From: Setoptus koraiensis
Taxonomy: Eukaryota; Animalia; Arthropoda
Direction of reading: 5' to 3'
NCBI GenBank assembly: GCA_048013815.1
Contig: CM106585.1
Coordinates: forward strand, 13,826,001 to 13,890,000
Length of the DNA stretch: 64,000 nt
A model generated the notes under the pieces. It searched no databases. It saw only the letters and a program-made list of their open reading frames with translations, and was not told where the DNA came from. Made by a program: the position numbers and the translations under genes. This document shows positions 1 to 13,067 of this stretch, in pieces; the first letter of the stretch is position 1; each line of letters begins with the position of its first letter.

Positions 1-431
1 GCTTGACTACGTTTCTTGACTATGGCAACGGAATAATGGCCTCTGTCCAGCTTTCCTGGACCATATTTTTCAATCATGATTGGACTCAAACTATGGTAAC
101 GGCCCGCCACTTCGATCTCTCCCGGATCTAATAGAACGAGATCGGCTCGTTCATCATCTATCATACTCATACATTGATCCTTGTCTATGGCCTGTATGCA
201 GTCTAAATTCAATTCCAGAGGTTCCTGGCCAAATGATGCCTGCTTATTGACATCCTCAATGGCTTTAGACCATTCGTTACATTTCTTTTGTTCATGAGTG
301 CTAACGGTGCACCATGATACTCGTTCACGTCTGTAAGGATTTTCTTGGCAGTGGATGGATTGCAAACAATTGAAAAATAATATAAAGAGACACGAGGTAA
401 TCTTGACCCTAACTGTCATTGTTCTAATCAT
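1..431 (-). CDS. Transferrin/melanotransferrin-family protein, 5' part (signal peptide plus start of N-lobe); continues beyond the left window edge
   Basis: Manual minus-strand translation from ATG 431 (in-frame TAG at 443-441 upstream) is open to base 1: MIRTMTVRVKITSCLFILFFNCLQSIHC-QENPYRRERVSWCTVSTHEQKKCNEWSKAI...LDCIQAIDKDQCMSMIDDERADLVLLDPGEIEVAGRYHSLSPIMIEKYGPGKLDRGHYSVAIVKKRSQ. It has a hydrophobic signal peptide and the transferrin lobe pattern (WC..E..KC; C......C...I....AD...LD.G; Y.VA.VKK). The paralogue cannot be assigned from this fragment. Confidence 0.9.
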   Translation of the reverse strand, partial: MIRTMTVRVKITSCLFILFFNCLQSIHCQENPYRRERVSWCTVSTHEQKKCNEWSKAIEDVNKQASFGQEPLELNLDCIQAIDKDQCMSMIDDERADLVLLDPGEIEVAGRYHSLSPIMIEKYGPGKLDRGHYSVAIVKKRSQ

Positions 432-747
432 ATCTTGAGCCTAAATATGTTTATTTGTACGGTAATATTTTATTCTTTATGTAAACTGACGATATCTTTG
501 ATTTACTTTCTTTGACGCGAAAGTGAGATTTCAGCAAAAGTGCAAGAATCTTAAGGTGTGGCCAAAGACTTTTGTTTCTCTCAGGTACTGTTGTTATTGT
601 AATCTTTAGTGCTGCGGCTGTTGTGCAATCAACTTTCTACTCTAATCAATTTCTTATCTTTTCAATGAATATAGTTACTATCATCAACACAATGATATTA
701 AAATCAGCTTTCTTAGAGTTGCGGTCATCTTTGGATAAGAAGTCGAA

Positions 748-753
748 TTTATT
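748..753 (-). terminator. Candidate polyadenylation signal (AATAAA) of Su(z)12
   Basis: TTTATT on the plus strand ~160 nt downstream of the Su(z)12 stop codon. Confidence 0.4.
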
Positions 754-911
754 CAATAGTTTTAAATCATAGATTCAAACAAAACTATGACGAACTTTAC
801 TTTATCTGATCAAACAATTGATAATTATTTCACCTACTATTATAGTACAATATTGTCAATGGAGAGTATATACTCGAAATTATAAAGAATAGGGCTCTCA
901 TTGGAACCAAT

Positions 912-2015
912 TCAACTATTCTTCATATCAACATGTGTGTAGGAGGAGTACAAGGCTTTTTTAGCTGGCGGCGATAGTTTATCTATGTAGGTTTGGGGTT
1001 CAAGTTTAGTCTTGTTAGAGGATATCTCATTGCGCATCTGATTGATTTTAAGAATGCATCTGTGAACGTCATCAGAACTTAATAATCCATAGTCATAGAG
1101 ATTAGCTAAATGAAGAGTTAAATTTTTGTAAAGTTTTTTAGCTAGAATTTCATGGCCGTAATCCTCGATGAAATGATAGCAAGCCCTGGGTATTTTTAAG
1201 TCACTTTTGTATCTACAATTTTGCATAATATGAAGGTTCCAACGTTTTAGTATTTCTTTTTCGCCCTCATTCACATCTGTAAATTCATCAATCATCAATT
1301 GTGTTCGCTCTCTTAACCAAGCGGGATCATTATCAGCCTCACTGTCTATGTCCACCTCATCTGGTTTAACAGGCAAACAGGTGGACGTGTGATAATATAA
1401 TCGATTGCGTATTGGCGCATTATTACATAGGCCCTCATCGCACATGTGATCATTAACTGAGGAGGTTTCGCTGACGATGGGTTTCTTAGATGGACGAGCG
1501 TAAATAACTTGAGTCTGTGTACCAATCAATATATTTTTGCCTTGCCTCTTGATGGGTCCATCGCGCGGTGTAAATCTAAAGTCTCTATTTACATCATGAC
1601 CGGGATGTTTGTAACCACAATAGGAGCCGTCGTAATTCGAATTGATGCCAATGTTAATATTGTAAATACCATTTGAAGTTGCTAGTTCCGATGTAAATCT
1701 TGAGTGGCAGTACTTGAGATGACCTAATAGACTGTGTATATTGCGTCCAGGAACATAACACCATGGACAAGATAGTGACGAATGTTTTGTTGTCTGGCAT
1801 ACTGAGTCCCCGCAATAAAAGTTGTAATGTATGATGACGGATCCCGGAGTGTTCTCTGCCTCGGAACGGATTTTTTCTGAGCGTAGTTTCATATAGGATA
1901 AATTTCTATGCAGAAATAGGGGCGAATCTTTGTGACGCGAAGCGAGATACCTATAGATTTGGGTGGGTGTTTGAAAGACCTCCATAAACCGTTTAAGTTG
2001 GCCCTGATCACTCAT
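912..2015 (-). CDS. Su(z)12: Polycomb repressive complex 2 subunit Su(z)12/SUZ12, intronless, 367 aa, internally shortened
   Basis: N-terminal ZnB helix (F..PTQIYRYL.SR....PLFLHRNLSYM), C2H2 finger (CPWC...SLLGHLKYCHSRF), YDGSY..GPIKR segment and VEFS box (NRLYYHTSTCLPV...DSE...DPAWLRERTQLMIDEFTDVNEGEKEILKRWNLHIM). ATG lies in a CCACCATG context. Confidence 0.95.
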   Translation of the reverse strand: MSDQGQLKRFMEVFQTPTQIYRYLASRHKDSPLFLHRNLSYMKLRSEKIRSEAENTPGSVIIHYNFYCGDSVCQTTKHSSLSCPWCYVPGRNIHSLLGHLKYCHSRFTSELATSNGIYNINIGINSNYDGSYCGYKHPGHDVNRDFRFTPRDGPIKRQGKNILIGTQTQVIYARPSKKPIVSETSSVNDHMCDEGLCNNAPIRNRLYYHTSTCLPVKPDEVDIDSEADNDPAWLRERTQLMIDEFTDVNEGEKEILKRWNLHIMQNCRYKSDLKIPRACYHFIEDYGHEILAKKLYKNLTLHLANLYDYGLLSSDDVHRCILKINQMRNEISSNKTKLEPQTYIDKLSPPAKKALYSSYTHVDMKNS

Positions 2016-2730
2016 GGTGGTGTTGTGAAGTGCAACAGTGAATTCTTTACCTGGGATAATATATATACAACAAATGTATAAGATAGGATATATACAAATT
2101 GTAAACTATCAGCGACAGTGCGTGGTATGTGATGCTGACGATCATGTGCTATAAGTCAGAAGTTCTATCGGCGGACCGTCTGTCTCGAGGTTCGTCTGAT
2201 TATGTGTGTGTGTGTGTGTGTGCGAAATTCGAAATTTTCGTATTACTGTGCTGGCAGCAAATAAATGCAACAAGAGTGCAGAGTGCATTGTGTGCGCTTT
2301 TTCGAATTGCATTAGTGAGTCTTTTTTCGAGCCGCCAGAAGCGCGCAGAGCGTCCTCGGATGCACACGCAAGCTGGGAGTGTTGCACTGGATGTTTATTT
2401 ATTTTGATTCGATTGAGCCCGCATGCGAGCGCATGCAATTTTGACGCGAGGTGGCGCATCGGCCGTTCACATTATTTCGCGCGGTCCTGCAGATGCGCAC
2501 TCCGCAGCATGAACTGCTACCAGCTCGAACCGTTTAAGATGAATCAAGCGCGCCGCCCTGGCGCAATAAAAGAAAACTAGCGCTGGCCATTGGAAATAGC
2601 GCACCCAGTGCAGTGGCACGGCACACACACACACACACGAGCACAGAATTGCAGTTCAGAGCCAAAATGGCGCTCTATGCGGCCATTTTCACAGCTCACA
2701 CTCTCGCAAACTCACACACACACACACACG

Positions 2731-2775
<45 letters not shown>

Positions 2776-3608
2776 TCCTAGATACACGCACGCACAAAGA
2801 GATAGCATCAGGCAAATGAACACACGCACAGACACACAAACACGGTTCACAGGCCATTTGCCCTATGAGAGGCGCTCTGTGCCTGTATGTGTTAGTGTGT
2901 GAGCATTGAGTGTAGCGAGTTTATATTCAAACAGACGCAGTGCGAAAGCGCAGTGTCCGATTTGCGAAAACCACGAATAGCGAGTGAGTGTGAGCTAACA
3001 AGAGCGGCACCACCAGCAGCAGCAGCAGCCAGTAGCTGTAGCTGTGTAACAAGCGCGCTAAATCAATCGCTGTGCGCCAACTATTTGTGAGTGCGTGTGT
3101 CACTTTGTTGCCGCTCTCGCCTCGGGTGCGTGCGTCAATTTCTGTGTCAATCTAAAAGGTGCACTAACACACGAATTCATAAAAGAAAACATCATCATAT
3201 TTTTGACTGGCCCAATCGTCTCCCTTTCGAATCCGACAACACGTTTATATTTATACACACTGACATTTGCTAGTATTATCATTATTATCCCAATTAATTA
3301 ATTTTGCATGATGTGTCTGGCATTGCGTCCGCTATCATTACCGCTGGCACCACAACCATATTCACCACTGACAGTACCGCCACCACATAAACAACGAATA
3401 ATTATTATTTGGAAAACAACAAACACAACAGGCCTCTTGTAATATAGAATTCGTCATAGGATCACTCAACATTTATCCCCCATCACTAATATTATTATCA
3501 TTATCCCATAGCCAACAACAATTGTATCAATGTTATTAACGCATGATTGAACAATCCTCAGGTAGCATAAGTAACAACCAAACACACAATTTACTTTTGA
3601 AATAGACC
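2016..3608. promoter_or_regulatory. Divergent (head-to-head) promoter/5'UTR interval between Su(z)12 and SMC3
   Basis: Both genes point away from this 1.6-kb interval. It contains (TG)10, a 63-bp (CA/CG)n tract, an inverted AAAATGGC...GCCATTTT pair (2664-2689) and a CTCF-core-like ACGCGAGGTGGCGC (2444-2457). Confidence 0.55.
2713..2775. repeat. (CA)n microsatellite with CG interruptions (continuous alternating purine-pyrimidine tract)
   Basis: Read directly. Confidence 0.95.
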
Positions 3609-6600
3609 ATGTATATTAAACAGGTAAGAATCTCGCGCCCAATCATCTCATATACTTAAAACTCTCCATTCACATTTCACAACAACGTACACCACATCTA
3701 ACAATTCTTTACAATTCTTCCTTGTCTCTCAACAAATAACCAATTCCAGTTAATCATCCAGGGGTTTAGATCCTACCGTGACCAAGTGGCAGTGGAACCA
3801 TTCAGCCCCAAACATAATGTCATAGTTGGACGTAACGGATCAGGAAAGAGCAACTTCTTTTATGCAATACAATTTGTCCTTAGCGATGAATTCTCACATT
3901 TAAGTGCCGAAGAACGTCAACAGCTTCTGCATGAAGGCACCGGTCAAAGGACTATGACTGCGTATGTCGAAATAGTCTTTGATAATAGTGACAATAGACT
4001 GCCAACTGACGAGCCACTCGTACCTCTAAGAAGACAATTCGGTGTTAAAAAAGATGAATATTTTTGGTGCAAGAAGAAGCACACCCGAAGTGAAGTCATG
4101 AACATGTTAGAGACTGCCGGTTTCTCTAGAAGTAATCCCTATTACATTGTTAAGCAAGGTAAAATAAACCAAATGGCCACAGCACCAGATAATCAGCGTC
4201 TCAAGATTCTCAAAGAAGTTGCTGGTATTCGCACCTTCGATGAAAACAAAGATGAATCTCATCAGTTAATTAACGTGTCCAGAGACAAACTAGAGATGGT
4301 CATTGGACTCATAGAATCCATTGAAAAGAAATTAGAGACTTTAGAGGGAGAAAAGGAAGAGCTGAAAGAATATCAGAAGTGGGATAAAATGCGCAGAGCT
4401 GTGGAGTACTCAATATTTAACAACGAGCTCGAAGATAGCCGCAAAAAACAACGAGAGCTTGAAGAAAGGAGAGAAAACTCTACATCCATAACTGAAAAAC
4501 TCAAAGAAAAATTGCAGAAATCTGCTGAAAGAATCAAAGATGCCAACAAAGAAGTCAAAGAAGTCCGAGAACAACTTAGAATCAATCGTGATGAAAAAGA
4601 AACTTTGCAACAAGATTTGGGTACATTCTTGAAGGATAAAACACGATTGGAGTTGCACATTAGGGATCTCATCGATGAAGTAGAAGGCGATGCCAACTCA
4701 AAACATAGAGCCGAGGGTGAGATGGTATCTTTAAGAGAGAAGATTGCTGAACGTCAAGCTGAACTCAACCAGATCAAACCGAAGTATGAAGAAGAAAAAA
4801 GAAGAGAGGAAGAGTGTGCCCGGTTACTAGCTCTAAAACAGCAAAAACGATCTGAGTTATATGCTCGCCAAGGAAGAGGATCTCAATTTACATCAAAATC
4901 AGAAAGAGATACTTGGATACAAAATGAATTGAAATCTTTGCGCAAGAATATAAACGACAAAAAGCAGCAAATTTCTCGTCTTAAAGACGACCTCGCCCGT
5001 GATGCTAGGAGAAAAGGCGAACTTGAAAAAAAGATTGAAGAATTGACCCAAGAATTAGACAATAACAGATCTAGCATCGATACTCAGAATAAGACTTTCT
5101 ATGATATGAAAAAGAAGAAAGACAATCTCCAAAACGAGCGAAATGATTTGTGGCGCCAAGAGAACATGATGCAATCTTCTCTAAATACCCTCAATGAAGA
5201 ACTGGCCAAAAAAGACCATATACTTAGGCGGTTGGTTGGAAAGACCCTCCTTAATGGTCGAGATAGTGTGCAAAAAGTTCTTCAGCATTTTCGAGAACAA
5301 GGAGGTCAGATGGCAAAAATTGCCAATGGTTATTATGGTATGCTCATTGAAAACTTGAATTGTGACAAAGAATTCTATACAGCTGTGGAAATGACTGCGG
5401 GAAATAAATTATTTCATCATGTGGTTGAACGGGACGACGTCGGTACTAAAATTCTCCAAGAGATGAATAAAATGCGTCTTCCTGGAGAGGTCACATTCAT
5501 GCCCTTGAATAGACTACAGGACAGAAAGATTGATTATCCCAACACAAAGGATGCTGTACCATTAATTAACAAAGTTAACTATGAGAAGAAAGTTGATGTA
5601 GTCATGAAATTCATATTCGGTAAGACTTTGATTTGTCGAACACTGGAGGTGGCTACATCCCTTGCAAAGGGTCGAACATTAGATTGCATTACTCTCGATG
5701 GAGATCAAGTATCGCACAAAGGTTCACTGACCGGTGGTTATTTTGACTCATCTAGAGACACAAGATTGAAAATTCATACTGATCATGGAAAGTTAACTAA
5801 GGAAGTCACGGAACAGAAAGCTAAGTTGGCCGAACTACTAAAGACTCTCACTGACATAGAAACTCAAATTAATCAAGTCGTTAGTGAAATGCAAAAATCA
5901 GAGACAAAAAACAGTAAAAACAAAGACACTTATGATAAGATGAAAGCTGACATTAGGCTTCTTAAAGACGAACTATCGACTATCGAACGATCTAAACAAC
6001 CCAAAGAGAGGAGTCTCATGAGTCATGAATCCAGCCTAAAATCAATGGAGTCCTCTCAGGAATCATTCTCTAACGAGATTCAGCAAGATCTCACGAAGGA
6101 GCTTTCTGTGACGGATCAGCAACAGGTGAATGCTCTAGATGAAGAAATCGCGAAATTGAAAGTTGAGAACTCGGGAGCGTTTAGTGCTCGTATGAGCCTC
6201 GAAGCCCAGAAAAATAAATTGGAGAATTTACTGAACAACAATTTATGTCGTAGACGTGATGAACTGGAGGCAGCCCTACATGAAATATCAATCGAAGAGA
6301 GGCAGCAAAAACTCGAAGGGGAGCGACAGGAGCTTGCTACGATAGACCAGCGAATAGATGCGGTGAGCGAGAAGATTCAAAAGTTGGACAAGATTATAGC
6401 CCGCAATCAAGAGAAGCTTCTCAAGGCTCAATCGATTATGGAGGAGGCTAAACGAGAAGAGAATGAAATCATTGAGCGCTTGAACGAAGATGTCAAGGAT
6501 CTGGAAAAGATATCCAGCAAAAAATCTGTCCTAAGTAAAAAAATTGAGGATTGCATGAAAAAGATACGTGAATTAGGTACCCTTCCAAGTGATGCAGAGA

Positions 6601-7466
6601 CGAAGTACTCACGACTCGGCTTGAAACAGCTCTACAAAAAACTCGAGCAGTGTAATCACGAATTGCAAAAGTATAGTCATGTAAATAAGAAAGCACTGGA
6701 TCAATATCTTGAATTCAGTGAAAGAAAGGAGACTCTTCTCGAAAGGAAACAAAAGATTGATGCAGAATACACTGCTATTTCCGACCTCATTAATACATTG
6801 GAACAGAGGAAATACAACGACATACAAACGACATTCAGCTTGGTATCTCAACATTTCAGTGATGTTTTCAAAAAACTTGTGCCCAATGGTAAAGCCAGTC
6901 TTGTCATGAGAACAGCGGACACTAATGATAGTACTGCATCCAGTATTGATTCCATGAATCGAGGAGGACCAGTAGGTATTGAAGCCGTCACAGGTGTAGG
7001 TATAAGGGTGTCTTTTACTGGTTCATTGGCTGAAATGAAGGATATGCAGCAACTTTCAGGAGGACAAAAATCTATCGTAGCCTTAGCATTCATTTTCGGA
7101 ATTCAAAAATGTGATCCTGCCCCTTTTTACCTTTTCGACGAGATCGATCAAGCTCTTGACCCCCAATATAGAAAATCTGTCGCAGAAATGATTCATGAAC
7201 TTGCTAGCACTGCTCAATTTATTACTACCACTTTCCGACCTGAACTTCTTGAAAATGCAGACAAGTTCTATGGAGTCAAATTCAGGGACAGGGTAAGTTT
7301 TAATAAATACGAATCATTTGCGTGTTGCTATCACATGCATCAAACATTGATCTGATCTTTTGCCATTGTTTCTCTTTCACTATCTACTTTACAGGTCAGT
7401 CATATCGAGGTTGTGAGCAAAGAAGAAGCTCAGGATTTCGTGGAAGACGACCAGGCTCATACCTAA
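3609..7466 (+). CDS. SMC3: Cohesin subunit SMC3, join(3609..3623,3750..7292,7395..7466), 1209 aa
   Basis: Exon 1 MYIKQ then CAG|GTAAGA; acceptor TTCCAG at 3749 gives LIIQGFRSYRDQ in frame with the 3786 ORF. Walker A GRNGSGKSN, acetylation-site KK (FGVKKDEYF), hinge (GYYGMLIE; LDGD..KGSLTGGY), signature LSGGQ and Walker B FYLFDEIDQALD are present. Donor AGG|GTAAGT at 7293 and acceptor TTTACAG at 7394 give the last exon VSHIEVVSKEEAQDFVEDDQAHT-stop, matching the SMC3 C-terminus. Confidence 0.97.
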
Positions 7467-7741
7467 TCGTCAACTGATTTTTCAGATTGAACCAATTAAT
7501 CGTATATAGGATTCCATTGGCCCACCTATCAAATTGTTTTCCCAAACTATGTAGAAATTCGATTTATTGGACAATCTCAGTGATCTGACATATGCACGAT
7601 ACAACAAGTTTAGATGAAATACTCACCGTTGCCATGGATACATTTTATTTTGTTCCATCATCATATTTTGAGTCAAAAAGAGTCACAACTCCAAAACTCA
7701 TCCAAAATGATTTAAAAACTTATACATTGATTATTATAAAT

Positions 7742-7747
7742 AATAAA
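7742..7747 (+). terminator. Candidate polyadenylation signal of SMC3
   Basis: AATAAA ~280 nt after the stop codon and ~120 nt before the kinase ATG. Confidence 0.4.
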
Positions 7748-7868
7748 TTCTATCTATAAAAATCGAGTACTATGCCCATTGTTAGTCTATTAATATATCA
7801 CATCATTTTTGATAGCTTGGTTGACGTTGGCTAAGCGTTAATTTCAATATTCAACAAATTCTCCTGTG

Positions 7869-9090
7869 ATGGCTCTATCAATGAATGATTTTGATCAACT
7901 TGGATCTATCGATGTCTCCAATGACAAGACTAGGTACTATGAATTATCGGTGCTTCACCAAGGACGTGACTCAATCGTTTTTCTAGCCACTGACAGAAAA
8001 CCCGAGAATGAAGCTCCGGCCAACGCTAACTCTGACAAGGGAATTTATTATGCAATTAAAAAGATTACTCTGGCAGGGGCATTTTCCGACATTCTATCAA
8101 GATTGACAAATCTTTCTACAGATATTAAAAGAAGATTTCTCTACTGCGAAAGAGAAATTGAGACTTTGAGAACTCTCAGAGGACATCCAAACGTAAGTAG
8201 CGAATTAATGAATTGATTGTTCTGATCTAAACAATACTGTCGTGACGACACGATAAAAATTGAATCTACAACATAGCATTCATTTCAATGTATATTTTGG
8301 TTTGACTTATCAGATTGTTGAGCTGTTGGGAGTGACAAGAACAGATTGCACATTCAATCTTATATTTGTTTATTGCGAGACAACTCTTTGGACACTGATA
8401 CATACAGAGAAGTGGTTCAGATTTAAAGAATCGGAACATGCTGAACAATTTCTCAACTTGGACAAGATTAGACAATGTAGCAGGATGATATTGCAAGGTT
8501 TGGCACATTGTCATGTCCACTCTATAGTGCATCGTGATCTAAAACCGTCTAACATTCTGATGGACCAACAATGTGTCTTTAAGCTGGCCGATTTTGGTCA
8601 GGCGCGCACAATTAGTATGGATAGTAGCGATAATAAAGATAGAGATGGACATGATACATGTGAGGATCAGCGTCAAATGTTGACTGCACTGGTTGGAACA
8701 AGATATTACAAATCACCTGAGCTGTTGTACGGGAGTATCAACTATAACAACTCGGTAGACATGTGGTCATTTGGTTGTGTACTGGCCGAGATATGCCTTG
8801 GTCACATATTGTTTCCTGGCAACAGCGACATTGAACAATTGATGCTGATAGTGGAAGCGATAGGGGAGGCGCCGTCTAGCAATTTCAACGGGTCACAAAT
8901 GGTTGATTACAACAAGATTATAATAGAGAGTGTAAGGTCAAGAGAGGAATCAGTGGAGAATTTAAAGAAGAACATATTGATGCCCATGATTGGCCATAAT
9001 AATTGTGTTGATCTTATAACAAATCTGTGCACTTATGAGAATCGTTTAAATGTTGAGCAAGCTCTAGGTCATGATTTCTTTTCTGAATGA
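7869..9090 (+). CDS. CDK20: Divergent CDK20/CCRK-like CMGC kinase, join(7869..8192,8314..9090), 366 aa
   Basis: YAIKK lysine, REIETLR..HPN|IVELL across a phase-0 GTAAGT...TTATCAG intron (8193-8313), HRDLKPSN, DFGQAR, VGTRYYKSPELLYGS, VDMWSFGCVLAE, LFPGNSDIEQL and DYNKI. The ELLYG, PG..DIEQL and DYNKI motifs are CCRK/CDK20-like. Kinase identity is secure; orthology is less so. Confidence 0.75.
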
Positions 9091-11664: not shown

Positions 11665-12696
11665 ATGTCACCTTCGAACGAGTACAGAACAGGTGCACTG
11701 AATCAACAATTACATCATCATCATCATCAGCAACAACAGCAACAACAACAACAACACAAGAGCCTCACGCAAATGGACGAGTCGCCCTCGTTGCTCAACC
11801 AGCACACTCTGGCGGCGCATCAGCACGCGGCTGCGGCCGCCGCCGCGGCCGCCATGCAACGCCAACAGCAGCAGCAGCACCATCAGCACCAGCAAGCGAC
11901 CGGCCCGGCCCCGCCCGGCATGGTCGCCGTTAACCCGTACGCTGCGGCGGCCGCAGCGGGCATGGCGGGCGCAATGCCCGGCGTTGCGCCGCCCGGTCAC
12001 TCGCCCATGGTGGGCGGCATGCCGCTGGCCGGCTTGCTGGGCGCGGGCGCCGGCGGACAACCGTCGCCACTGTTGTCGGCCATAGCCGCGTTGGGTGCCC
12101 ATCATCAGCACGGAGCCATGGCGGCGGCGCACGCTGCCCACGGCGCCGCCAACGGAGCCGCGATGCCCGAGCCCGACGACGACGGCATTGTGGACGACCC
12201 AAAGGTCATTCTGGAGGCCAAACAATTGTGGACCAACTTTCACGCCATAGGCACAGAGATGGTCATCACAAAGTCGGGCCGGCGCATGTTTCCGCCCTTC
12301 AAGGTGCGTATGAGCGGCCTGGACAAGAAGGCCAAATACATCATGCTGATGGACATTGTTGCAGCGGACGATTGCCGCTACAAATTTCACAATTCGCGCT
12401 GGATGATGGCAGGCAAAGCGGATCCCGAAATGACCAAGCGCATGTACATACATCCCGATTCGCCCTCTACTGGCGAGCAGTGGATGCAAAAAATAGTGTC
12501 GTTTCACAAGCTCAAGCTCACAAATAACATCAGCGACAAATTTGGCTTTACAGTGCTGAACAGCATGCACAAGTACCAGCCCCGGTTTCACCTGGTGCGC
12601 GCCAACGACATCAAGCGGCTGCCCTACAGCACGTTCCGGACGTACGTGTTCAAGGAGACCGAGTTCATCGCGGTCACCGCCTACCAGAACGAGAAG
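11665..12696 (+). CDS. omb: optomotor-blind/Tbx2-3 T-box factor, coding exon 1 (polyQ/polyA N-terminus and most of the T-box)
   Basis: [80 protein letters not shown]...[46 protein letters not shown] is diagnostic of the Tbx2/3/omb subfamily. In-frame TAG directly before the ATG; donor AAG|GTGAGT at 12697. Confidence 0.95.
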
Positions 12697-12832
12697 GTGA
12701 GTTGCATAATAGTTACAATGAGATGCACGGCTCCGGCCGACCCCAATAAGCCCAATTTCGCCGATACTGACCCCAATCTCGCCAACAATAACCCCGATTT
12801 CGCCGATAATTTTCGCCCCGAAATTCGACCAG

Positions 12833-12909
12833 GTGACCAAGCTCAAGATTGACAACAACCCCTTCGCCAAGGGCTTCAGGGAAACGGGCGCGGGCAAGCG
12901 CGAAAAGAA
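12833..12909 (+). CDS. omb: omb coding exon 2 (end of T-box, [25 protein letters not shown]), 77 nt
   Basis: Acceptor CCAG at 12832 (phase 0) and donor AA|GTGAGT at 12910 (phase 2). Encodes the conserved [13 protein letters not shown]-box terminus. Confidence 0.93.
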
Positions 12910-13067
12910 GTGAGTATCCCCCGTCATGTCACATCTGACATGTGATATCATGTCACATCTGACATGCGACATTATATCACATGTATGAGTGATGCAATAT
13001 CACGCAATGTGTCACCTAGTCTGCCAATACCCATAACTAACCGCCCCCCCTTTTGTCTGCTCGCCAG

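What the first reader, a model, noticed from the sequence alone, without database searches (positions are those of the whole stretch)
912..2015. Miniaturised Su(z)12 lacking the C2 domain and WD40-binding segments: a possible stripped-down PRC2
Seen: only ~17 residues (K43-S59) separate the ZnB helix ending RNLSYM from the strand preceding the zinc finger (VIIHYNFY...CQT...CPWC), inside one uninterrupted ORF, so no hidden exon can fit. Established: human SUZ12 has >300 aa here (WDB1, C2, WDB2), which wrap RBBP4/Nurf55 and bind AEBP2 and PCL proteins; ZnB-Zn binds JARID2-type partners and VEFS supports catalysis. Inference: this PRC2 keeps the catalytic and JARID2-type interfaces but has lost most Nurf55, PCL and AEBP2/Jing docking, implying a different recruitment logic.
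Basis: partly seen in the sequence, partly recalled or inferred. Interest (0 to 1): 0.7.

Follow-up and report, generated by a model that had tools for sequence, protein, structure and literature searches.

The report
Mite Su(z)12 without its C2 domain
This mite, and about forty relatives in the eriophyoid (gall and rust mite) lineage, carry a half-size but well-conserved version of the Polycomb scaffold protein Su(z)12 that has lost one whole domain, the C2 hub where helper proteins normally dock, so it is a natural test of what that domain is for.

Summary
Window 912-2015 (-) is one uninterrupted 367-aa ORF. It matches human SUZ12 84-125 and then 421-692, with 17 residues where human has about 295.

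The published domain order is ZnB-WDB1-C2-Zn-WDB2-VEFS. WDB2 therefore lies after the zinc finger and is kept, and the 'RNLSYM' stretch is part of the conserved RBBP4/Nurf55-binding epitope (FLxRx[VL]) of WDB1. What is missing is the C2 domain, plus the WDB1 tail in this species.

It is not an artefact. Three independent assemblies span the junction with no differences. dN/dS against a 96%-identical orthologue is 0.044.

It is not a one-off. About 42 proteins of 310-495 aa share the loss. They form one clade on a long stem, lie head-to-head with SMC3 as here, and belong to the eriophyoid lineage (SMC3 nearest to Aceria tosichella). An oribatid, chiggers, ticks, spiders and insects keep C2.

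The likely result is a PRC2 that keeps its catalytic core, Caf1-55 contacts and the JARID2-type platform, but lacks canonical PCL docking and C2-mediated dimerisation.

Not shown: absence of a full-length paralogue in the whole genome, and expression. An earlier scan note reports a mini-JARID2 in this genome. I found no paper describing the loss.

The parts
912..2015 (-). Single-exon gene for a 367-aa Su(z)12 orthologue without a C2 domain (stop codon at 912-914)
   Evidence: ORF. Pfam Zn_SUZ12 and VEFS-Box. E 1.5e-65 to human SUZ12. dN/dS 0.044 against the L001 orthologue.
1926..1994 (-). ZnB helix, residues 8-30, matching human 84-106. It includes the AEBP2-binding helix equivalent (human 95-106).
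   Evidence: phmmer alignment. AF2 helix at 4-30, which fits together with the Zn domain onto 5WAI_B, 6NQ3_B and 9XZI_A residues 79-496 at Z 14. Human boundaries come from bioRxiv 10.1101/2023.04.30.538846 and PMC6049511.
1890..1925 (-). Start of WDB1, residues 31-42 (SPLFLHRNLSYM). This is the conserved RBBP4/Nurf55-binding epitope FLxRx[VL].
   Evidence: Aligns to human 107-118. The motif is defined in PMC9253717. P32, L35, R37, L39, S40 and Y41 are at least 90% conserved in the short clade.
1839..1889 (-). 17-residue linker (K43-S59) standing where the WDB1 tail, the C2 domain and the C2-Zn linker lie in canonical SUZ12 (human 126-420)
   Evidence: The position is poorly conserved and variable in length across the clade, with ZnB-to-CPWC spacing of 57-148 aa against 329-352 in canonical proteins. 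Spanned without differences by independent assemblies.
1638..1838 (-). Zn domain (SUZ12-type C2H2 finger), residues 60-126
   Evidence: Pfam PF23320. pLDDT about 90. C83, W85, C86, H99 and H104 are invariant.
1413..1637 (-). WDB2-equivalent region and variable spacer, residues 127-201. The block 127-160 (DGSY.G[FY]K[YH]PGHD..DF.F) is conserved.
   Evidence: Aligns to human about 493-560. D129, Y132, G134, K136, P138, G139, H140, D145 and F148 are invariant in the clade. pLDDT is low, as expected for a segment that folds on a partner.
1011..1412 (-). VEFS box, residues 202-335, the E(z)/Esc-binding catalytic-lobe part. It includes the conserved DSE site (S225).
   Evidence: Pfam PF09733, E 2.2e-40. 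Fits human 586-693 at Z 15.4, rmsd 1.8 A. Most conserved region of the protein (0.81).
942..974 (-). Clade-specific C-terminal motif (SPPAKKALYSS here; consensus SPPAKRALLNS). It is absent from canonical Su(z)12.
   Evidence: Alignments A1 and A2. Its function is unknown. A nuclear-localisation or partner-binding role is only my inference.
2016..3785 (.). Intergenic region shared with the divergently transcribed SMC3 gene. It holds (GT)n tracts and a dispersed repeat at about 2360-2500.
   Evidence: depth rises to 428 against 120. The head-to-head arrangement is conserved in L002 and in L004/L005.
3786..7355 (+). SMC3 (cohesin) gene, a conserved head-to-head neighbour. Used here to place the organism.
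   Evidence: The best named hit is Aceria tosichella at 77%. SMC3 tree.

Best explanation
This is most likely the lineage's own working Su(z)12 gene, not a decayed or stray copy, in a mite on a deep branch of the eriophyoid lineage.

On the stem of that lineage the C2 domain was removed from the middle of the protein, leaving ZnB, the start of WDB1, Zn, WDB2 and VEFS in one intronless ORF. In this species the leftover linker has shrunk to 17 residues.

Shown:
- Gene structure and which domains are present or missing.
- Strong purifying selection.
- The loss is shared across the clade, and gene order next to SMC3 is conserved.
- C2 is kept in other mites.
- The ZnB-Zn unit and the VEFS fold are predicted to be preserved.

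Inferred:
- The protein still assembles the catalytic lobe with E(z) and Esc through VEFS.
- It still holds Caf1-55/Nurf55 through the FLxRxL epitope and WDB2.
- It still offers the ZnB-Zn surface to a JARID2-type partner. An earlier scan note reports a stand-alone mini-JARID2 in this genome.
- It cannot dock Polycomblike through C2 strand beta-8.
- It cannot form the C2-swapped PRC2 dimer.
- It cannot plug the H3K4 pocket of Caf1-55 with the C2 basic loop.
- It can offer AEBP2/Jing only the ZnB helix contact.
For: - Domain content.
- No C2: an HMM with positive controls finds none in the short-clade proteins, the window (which includes this ORF) or the related loci.
- Junction confirmed in three independent assemblies.
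- dN/dS 0.044 at dS 0.48, low in every segment including the linker.
- 42 short homologues with ZnB-to-Zn spacing of 57-148 aa.
- They form one clade (SH-aLRT 100) on a stem of 1.4-1.7 substitutions per site. No long form nests inside it.
- The same head-to-head SMC3 neighbour is seen in three further species. The SMC3 tree mirrors the Su(z)12 tree and includes Aceria tosichella.
- A profile search of 1.84 billion representatives shows a gap between the short clade (E <= 4e-101) and canonical proteins (E >= 8e-95). In the motif scan of the new representatives, every one in which both the ZnB and CPWC motifs were recognised has a spacing of at least 266 aa, and the hits already seen split the same way; many rows are fragments that could not be scored.
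- Oppia nitens, Leptotrombidium and Dinothrombium keep C2.
- The structure model fits human ZnB+Zn at Z 14 and VEFS at Z 15.4.
- Roles of the lost and kept parts: PMC9255955, PMC6049511, PMC7000746, PMC9253717 and bioRxiv 10.1101/2023.04.30.538846.
Against: - I could not search the whole genome, so a second, full-length copy or a separate C2-only gene elsewhere is not excluded.
- Expression is not shown. The only hint is a 154-nt contig in a run merely guessed to be RNA.
- No partner protein (E(z), Esc, Caf1-55, Pcl, Jing) was examined.
- Whether 17 residues are enough for the WDB1 epitope to reach Caf1-55 while ZnB packs on Zn was not modelled.
- The long stem branch means partner interfaces may have changed in ways that sequence comparison cannot reveal.
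- The placement of the short clade beside the other acariform sequences is unresolved in the tree.
Confidence: 0.75

Rival explanations
1. It is an extra copy, such as a retrogene made from an exon-skipped transcript, that coexists with a normal full-length Su(z)12 elsewhere in the genome. In that case it acts as a specialised or competing isoform rather than the only scaffold.
For: - The gene is intronless.
- The clade sits on a very long stem, as fast-evolving duplicates often do.
- The 5' edge of the loss lies near an intron position kept in Leptotrombidium and Dinothrombium, at about residue 122.
- The whole genome could not be searched.
Against: - Neighbouring genes are intronless too (SMC3 is a single ORF of 1189 aa), so lack of introns says little.
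- The locus keeps the same SMC3 neighbour across the clade, and the Su(z)12 tree matches the SMC3 tree, as expected for an orthologue.
- No long-form protein groups with the short clade in a word search, a C2-region search or the exhaustive profile search.
- The two JGI metagenomes that carry the relative's locus on 30-75 kb contigs gave no C2-encoding contig. That scan is pattern-based, so this is weak.
- Eriophyoid genomes are strongly reduced (PMC7738191).
Confidence: 0.12
2. The C2 domain was not lost but split off. It would survive as a separate gene whose product rejoins the complex non-covalently.
For: Nothing direct. Only 64 kb of this genome and about 100 kb of related loci could be scanned.
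Against: - No C2-like ORF in the window or in the eriophoid-lineage loci, while the same HMM finds the positive controls at E 2e-50 and 9e-69.
- No such contig in the metagenome scan from the samples that hold the relative.
Confidence: 0.05
3. It is an assembly or annotation artefact, or a decaying remnant with no function.
For: None found.
Against: - Three independent assemblies are identical across the junction.
- The ORF is intact, with dN/dS 0.044 at dS 0.48.
- More than 40 species keep the same architecture, with invariant zinc ligands and an invariant VEFS core.
Confidence: 0.02

Closest known systems
Canonical animal SUZ12 / Su(z)12 (human SUZ12, PDB 5WAI, 6C23, 6NQ3; chelicerate orthologues such as Leptotrombidium, Oppia, Tachypleus)
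   Same: ZnB helix, the FLxRxL RBBP4/Nurf55 epitope, the C2H2 Zn domain, the WDB2 region and the VEFS box are all present and in the same order. The aligned parts are 38-45% identical. The predicted folds superpose at Z 14-15.
   Different: The whole C2 domain is missing (human 153-365), along with its flanks (126-152 and 366-420). The protein is 367 aa against 600-900. There is a clade-specific C-terminal SPPAKRALL-type motif and a distinctive GFKYPGHD block in WDB2.
C. elegans MES-3, a highly divergent SUZ12 orthologue (PMC9253717)
   Same: Another animal lineage in which the PRC2 scaffold was heavily remodelled while PRC2 stayed in use.
   Different: MES-3 is remodelled in the opposite way. 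Its recognisable similarity covers part of ZnB, WDB1 and the C2 domain, and its VEFS is barely detectable. The mite protein has an easily recognised Zn and VEFS but no C2.
Mammalian SUZ12-S, the exon-4-skipped isoform (bioRxiv 10.1101/2023.04.30.538846)
   Same: A natural change in the segment between ZnB and C2 that alters which accessory subunits bind.
   Different: SUZ12-S loses only 23 residues (129-152), keeps C2, and favours PRC2.1 and dimerisation. The mite protein lacks C2 altogether and is the genomic form, not a splice variant.
Engineered SUZ12 separation-of-function constructs: VEFS-only, and the PHF1mut 338-353 / ABHmut 95-106 mutants (PMC6049511)
   Same: Removing the C2 strand beta-8 abolishes PCL binding without disturbing core assembly. 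The mite protein resembles a natural C2-deleted version that keeps ZnB, Zn and VEFS.
   Different: Those are laboratory mutants of the human protein. In cells they lower chromatin binding. The mite form has been kept by selection across a whole lineage.

Membership tests
SUZ12 / Su(z)12 family (PRC2 scaffold subunit) | C-terminal VEFS box | tested here: met
   Pfam PF09733, 138 bits against a cut-off of 23. Fits human 586-693 at Z 15.4, rmsd 1.8 A.
SUZ12 / Su(z)12 family (PRC2 scaffold subunit) | SUZ12-type C2H2 zinc-finger domain | tested here: met
   Pfam PF23320, 46 bits against a cut-off of 28. The Cys and His ligands are invariant. pLDDT is about 90.
SUZ12 / Su(z)12 family (PRC2 scaffold subunit) | N-terminal ZnB helix that packs on the Zn domain | tested here: met
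   Aligns to human 84-106. In the model, residues 3-129 fit human 79-496 as one rigid unit at Z 14, rmsd 2.6-3.2 A. This is a prediction, not a solved structure.
SUZ12 / Su(z)12 family (PRC2 scaffold subunit) | WDB1 with the RBBP4/Nurf55-binding epitope FLxRx[VL] | tested here: met
   FLHRNL at residues 34-39 aligns to human 110-115. The motif is defined in PMC9253717. The WDB1 tail (human 126-145) is absent in this species but present in many clade members.
SUZ12 / Su(z)12 family (PRC2 scaffold subunit) | Physical assembly with E(z), Esc and Caf1-55, and support of H3K27 methylation | not testable with these tools
   No genome-wide access and no complex prediction. Inferred only from the conserved interfaces.
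Canonical animal SUZ12 architecture (ZnB-WDB1-C2-Zn-WDB2-VEFS) | C2 domain between WDB1 and Zn | tested here: not met
   17 residues stand in its place. The C2 HMM finds nothing in the window, which includes this ORF, or in any short-clade protein, while the positive controls score E 2e-50 and 9e-69.
Canonical animal SUZ12 architecture (ZnB-WDB1-C2-Zn-WDB2-VEFS) | WDB2 between Zn and VEFS | tested here: inconclusive
   The region aligns to human about 493-560 and has a conserved block, but that block is clade-specific in sequence. Binding to Caf1-55 was not tested.
Retrogene / processed paralogue | A parent gene elsewhere, a new genomic location and no conserved neighbours | tested here: not met
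   The head-to-head SMC3 neighbour is conserved across the clade. No long-form relative groups with the clade. The parent-gene part could not be tested on the whole genome.

The most novel reading that the evidence does not exclude
The whole eriophyoid mite lineage may run a stripped-down PRC2. Its scaffold has no C2 hub, so there would be no Polycomblike docking, no C2-swap dimer and no C2 plug in the Caf1-55 histone pocket. Targeting would rest on the ZnB-Zn platform bound by a stand-alone mini-JARID2, which an earlier scan note reports in this genome. That would be a natural PRC2.2-like-only system in an animal, evolved together with extreme genome and body-plan reduction.
Probability: 0.4. 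Interest if true: 0.75.

Novelty: new variant of a known kind. Interest (0 to 1): 0.6.

Why it matters
[quoted passage not shown] C2 is the switch point that decides between PRC2.1 (PCL) and PRC2.2 (AEBP2/JARID2), and it mediates PRC2 dimerisation (PMC9255955).

A lineage that has lived without C2 for a long time, under strong purifying selection on the rest of the protein, is a natural separation-of-function experiment. It can show which PRC2 activities need C2 and how targeting works without Polycomblike docking. It also bears on whether loss of accessory-subunit interfaces goes along with genome streamlining.

The shared deletion and the Su(z)12-SMC3 gene pair are also rare genomic changes. 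They may help to place Eriophyoidea and this mite's lineage, whose position is disputed.

Tried and rejected
- Assembly collapse at 1840-1890: rejected. Three independent assemblies are identical there.
- Pseudogene: rejected (dN/dS 0.044).
- Hidden exon or upstream extension: rejected. The ORF is continuous, and the homologues start at the same point.
- WDB2 in the gap: rejected from the published domain order.
- Deletion common in arthropods: rejected. Oppia, Leptotrombidium, Dinothrombium, ticks, spiders, horseshoe crab, insects and crustaceans keep C2.
- C2 remnant in the longer linkers of relatives: none found by HMM.
- C2-like ORF near the gene: none.
- Word search with the Leptotrombidium C2 region: it found only Dinothrombium and scattered distant taxa, too insensitive to settle the paralogue question.
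- Metagenome scan for C2 patterns: the first alignment was too diverse (error). The second gave 10 loci, none from the samples holding the relative. This is weak negative evidence.
- RNA evidence: no run on record as RNA holds the gene. There is one 154-nt contig in a run guessed to be RNA, and a 1.5-kb Logan contig of a relative has no poly(A) tail. Inconclusive.
- Species name: a two-contig, 49.1-Mb broad-mite genome (PMC11233664) fits the number of scanned windows. The SMC3 and Su(z)12 trees, however, put the window beside Eriophyoidea, so I leave the species open.
- Chen et al. 2018 (PMC5912153) is not held. Domain boundaries were taken from papers that cite it.
- Scan notes searched for 'zeste' and 'H3K27': nothing.

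Full report
**1. The observation**

Window 912-2015 on the minus strand is one open reading frame of 367 codons that starts with ATG. Read directly, residues 8-42 run KRFMEVFQTPTQIYRYLASRHKDSPLFLHRNLSYM. Residues 43-59 (17 residues, window 1839-1889) follow, and then VIIHYNFYC...CPWC.

Pfam finds Zn_SUZ12 at 62-126 and the VEFS box at 202-322. Against PDB sequences, residues 8-49 align to human SUZ12 84-125 and residues 54-335 to 421-692, with E 1.5e-65. About 295 human residues therefore have no counterpart.

**2. It is real DNA and a working gene**

Contigs from independent public runs cover the junction without a single difference:
- X2: a 15.7-kb contig at depth 120, covering 500-2616.
- X3: covering 1294-2192.
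- X7: covering 994-1969.

This removes the assembly-collapse objection.

The closest relative is P0001, on Logan contig L001, which is 96% identical in protein. Comparing the two genes codon by codon gives dS 0.48, dN 0.022 and dN/dS 0.044. The ratio is low in every segment, including the short linker. The gene is under strong purifying selection.

Expression could not be shown. No holder of the sequence is on record as RNA. The only hint is a 154-nt contig in a run merely guessed to be RNA.

**3. What exactly is missing**

The published domain order of SUZ12 is ZnB, WDB1, C2, Zn, WDB2, VEFS (PMC9253717 and PMC7000746). The human boundaries are ZnB 79-106, WDB1 110-145, C2 153-365 and Zn 426-492 (bioRxiv 10.1101/2023.04.30.538846). 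VEFS starts at 561 (PMC6049511).

Mapped through the alignment, the mite protein keeps:
- all of ZnB;
- Zn;
- the WDB2 region;
- VEFS.

It lacks the WDB1 tail, the hinge, the whole C2 domain and the C2-Zn linker.

Both points are wrong, and they matter, because the two linear Nurf55-binding elements are retained rather than lost.

Within the clade the epitope segment (residues 31-42) and the WDB2 block (127-160) are well conserved. Their mean top-residue frequencies are 0.73 and 0.71, against 0.35 for the linker.

**4. Structure**

An AlphaFold2 model built on the 43-sequence alignment has confident Zn (pLDDT about 90) and VEFS parts. Two fits to human SUZ12 stand out:
- Residues 3-129 (ZnB helix plus Zn) superpose as one unit on human SUZ12 79-496 in 5WAI, 6NQ3 and 9XZI, at Z 14 and rmsd 2.6-3.2 A over 108-113 residues.
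- Residues 228-336 superpose on human 586-693 at Z 15.4 and rmsd 1.8 A.

The JARID2/EPOP-binding platform and the catalytic-lobe part are thus predicted to survive the deletion.

**5. It is a lineage trait, not a one-off**

The word-index protein search returned about 42 proteins of 310-495 aa with the same architecture. Their spacing from the ZnB motif to CPWC is 57-148 aa, against 329-352 aa in canonical proteins. None of them hits a C2-region HMM that scores the positive controls strongly.

In trees of the Zn-to-VEFS region they form one clade with SH-aLRT 100, on a stem of 1.4-1.7 substitutions per site. The window and P0001 are the first branch. No long-form protein nests inside the clade.

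The gene lies head-to-head with SMC3 in the window, in L002 and in L004/L005. Matching contig lengths suggest, without confirmation, that two more short forms (P0008, P0044) also share a contig with SMC3.

**6. Who carries it**

The neighbouring SMC3 is 77% identical to that of Aceria tosichella (Eriophyoidea). It is 66-69% identical to Dinothrombium, Leptotrombidium, Blomia, Tyrophagus and Dermatophagoides.

The organism is therefore a mite on a deep branch of the eriophyoid lineage. I leave the species open.

By contrast, several other groups keep C2:
- the oribatid Oppia nitens (711 aa);
- the chiggers and velvet mites Leptotrombidium and Dinothrombium;
- ticks, spiders and the horseshoe crab;
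- insects and crustaceans.

The loss maps to the stem of the eriophyoid lineage.

**7. Is there a second, full-length copy?**

I could not search the genome itself. The indirect evidence is negative:
- A profile of the short clade was searched against 1.84 billion representative proteins. It gives five short-clade representatives (E <= 4e-101) and then a gap to canonical proteins (E >= 8e-95).
- In that search's new representatives, every protein in which my motif scan recognised both the ZnB and the CPWC motif has a spacing of at least 266 aa. Many rows are fragments or lack one motif and could not be scored.
- Unnamed long forms group with ticks, spiders, insects or outgroups, never with the short clade.
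- No C2-like ORF lies in the 64-kb window or in the related loci.
- A pattern scan of metagenome contigs found ten C2-encoding loci. None came from the two JGI samples that carry the relative's locus on 30-75 kb contigs.

These results lower the paralogue and split-gene rivals but do not exclude them.

**8. How it most likely works**

C2 has four known roles:
- It is the docking site of the PCL reversed-chromo domain. Mutating 338-353 abolishes PHF1 and PHF19 binding while core assembly stays intact (PMC6049511).
- It binds the AEBP2 C2-binding domain.
- It mediates the domain-swapped PRC2 dimer.
- It inserts a basic loop (R196) into the acidic pocket of RBBP4 (PMC9255955, PMC7000746).

A C2-less scaffold that keeps VEFS, the Nurf55 epitope, WDB2 and the ZnB-Zn platform should behave as follows:
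- It should still build an active four-subunit core and bind a JARID2-type partner.
- It should lack canonical Polycomblike docking and C2-driven dimerisation.
- It could leave the Caf1-55 histone pocket unplugged.
- AEBP2/Jing could at most use the ZnB helix contact (human 95-106).

That fits a PRC2 built around the JARID2 route. All of this is inference from conserved interfaces. No partner was examined.

**9. Origin of the deletion**

In Leptotrombidium and Dinothrombium an intron lies at about residue 122, just before C2. C2, Zn and WDB2 then share one large exon. Many short-clade members keep the WDB1 tail and then a low-complexity linker.

The original event therefore removed C2 rather precisely, with its 5' edge near an old intron position. 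This species later trimmed the linker further. Whether an exon-skipped transcript was copied back during intron loss is speculation.

**10. Novelty and verdict**

Full-text searches found no paper that links SUZ12 with eriophyoid or other acariform mites. The Aculops lycopersici genome paper mentions neither Polycomb nor chromatin. [quoted passage not shown]

I rate this as a new variant of a known kind: a clade-wide, selected, C2-less Su(z)12.

Noticed in passing
window 942-974 (-), and the C-termini of P0002, P0006-P0039: A short C-terminal motif (consensus SPPAKRALLNS; SPPAKKALYSS here) is conserved across the short Su(z)12 clade and absent from canonical Su(z)12. It may be a nuclear-localisation or partner motif gained after the C2 loss.
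   Followed up: partly
window 1799-1888, run X2 record 3: A low-depth contig (2.2 against 120) matches both sides at about 90% identity but has 73 letters in place of 88. The same sample seems to hold a diverged relative or strain whose linker is five codons shorter.
   Followed up: no
window 2200-2860 and 2360-2500: The Su(z)12-SMC3 intergenic region holds long (GT)n/(CA)n tracts. It also holds a dispersed repeat whose contig depth rises three- to four-fold, with many loose ends leading to other loci.
   Followed up: no
window 1-8000 against 8001-64000: G+C rises from 0.40 in the first 8 kb to 0.51-0.57 in the rest of the window. The high-GC part has few long ORFs with Pfam matches.
   Followed up: no
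window 11665-12852 (+) and 11710-12972 (-): A T-box transcription-factor ORF (Pfam T-box, E 1e-69) is overlapped by a 420-aa antisense ORF with no Pfam match. The antisense ORF is probably a by-product of the high G+C.
   Followed up: partly
window 1-400 (-); L001 2604-5165: A transferrin gene lies downstream of Su(z)12. Its start is cut by the window edge, and the relative's locus L001 has the full 853-aa gene in the same position.
   Followed up: partly
L010 1390-1440; L002 8231-8665; L004 11495-12025: In several relatives the Su(z)12 ORF ends early next to a GT, and a small unannotated ORF follows directly. These species may keep a C-terminal intron, so the Logan single-ORF protein calls may be truncated.
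   Followed up: no
window 8260-9090 (+): An ORF with a protein-kinase domain (Pfam Pkinase, E 1.9e-39). The match starts at profile position 59, so an upstream exon is likely.
   Followed up: no
SMC3 and Su(z)12 trees: The shared C2 deletion and the Su(z)12-SMC3 head-to-head pair are rare genomic changes. They tie the window's mite to the clade that contains Aceria tosichella, and could help with the disputed placement of Eriophyoidea.
   Followed up: partly
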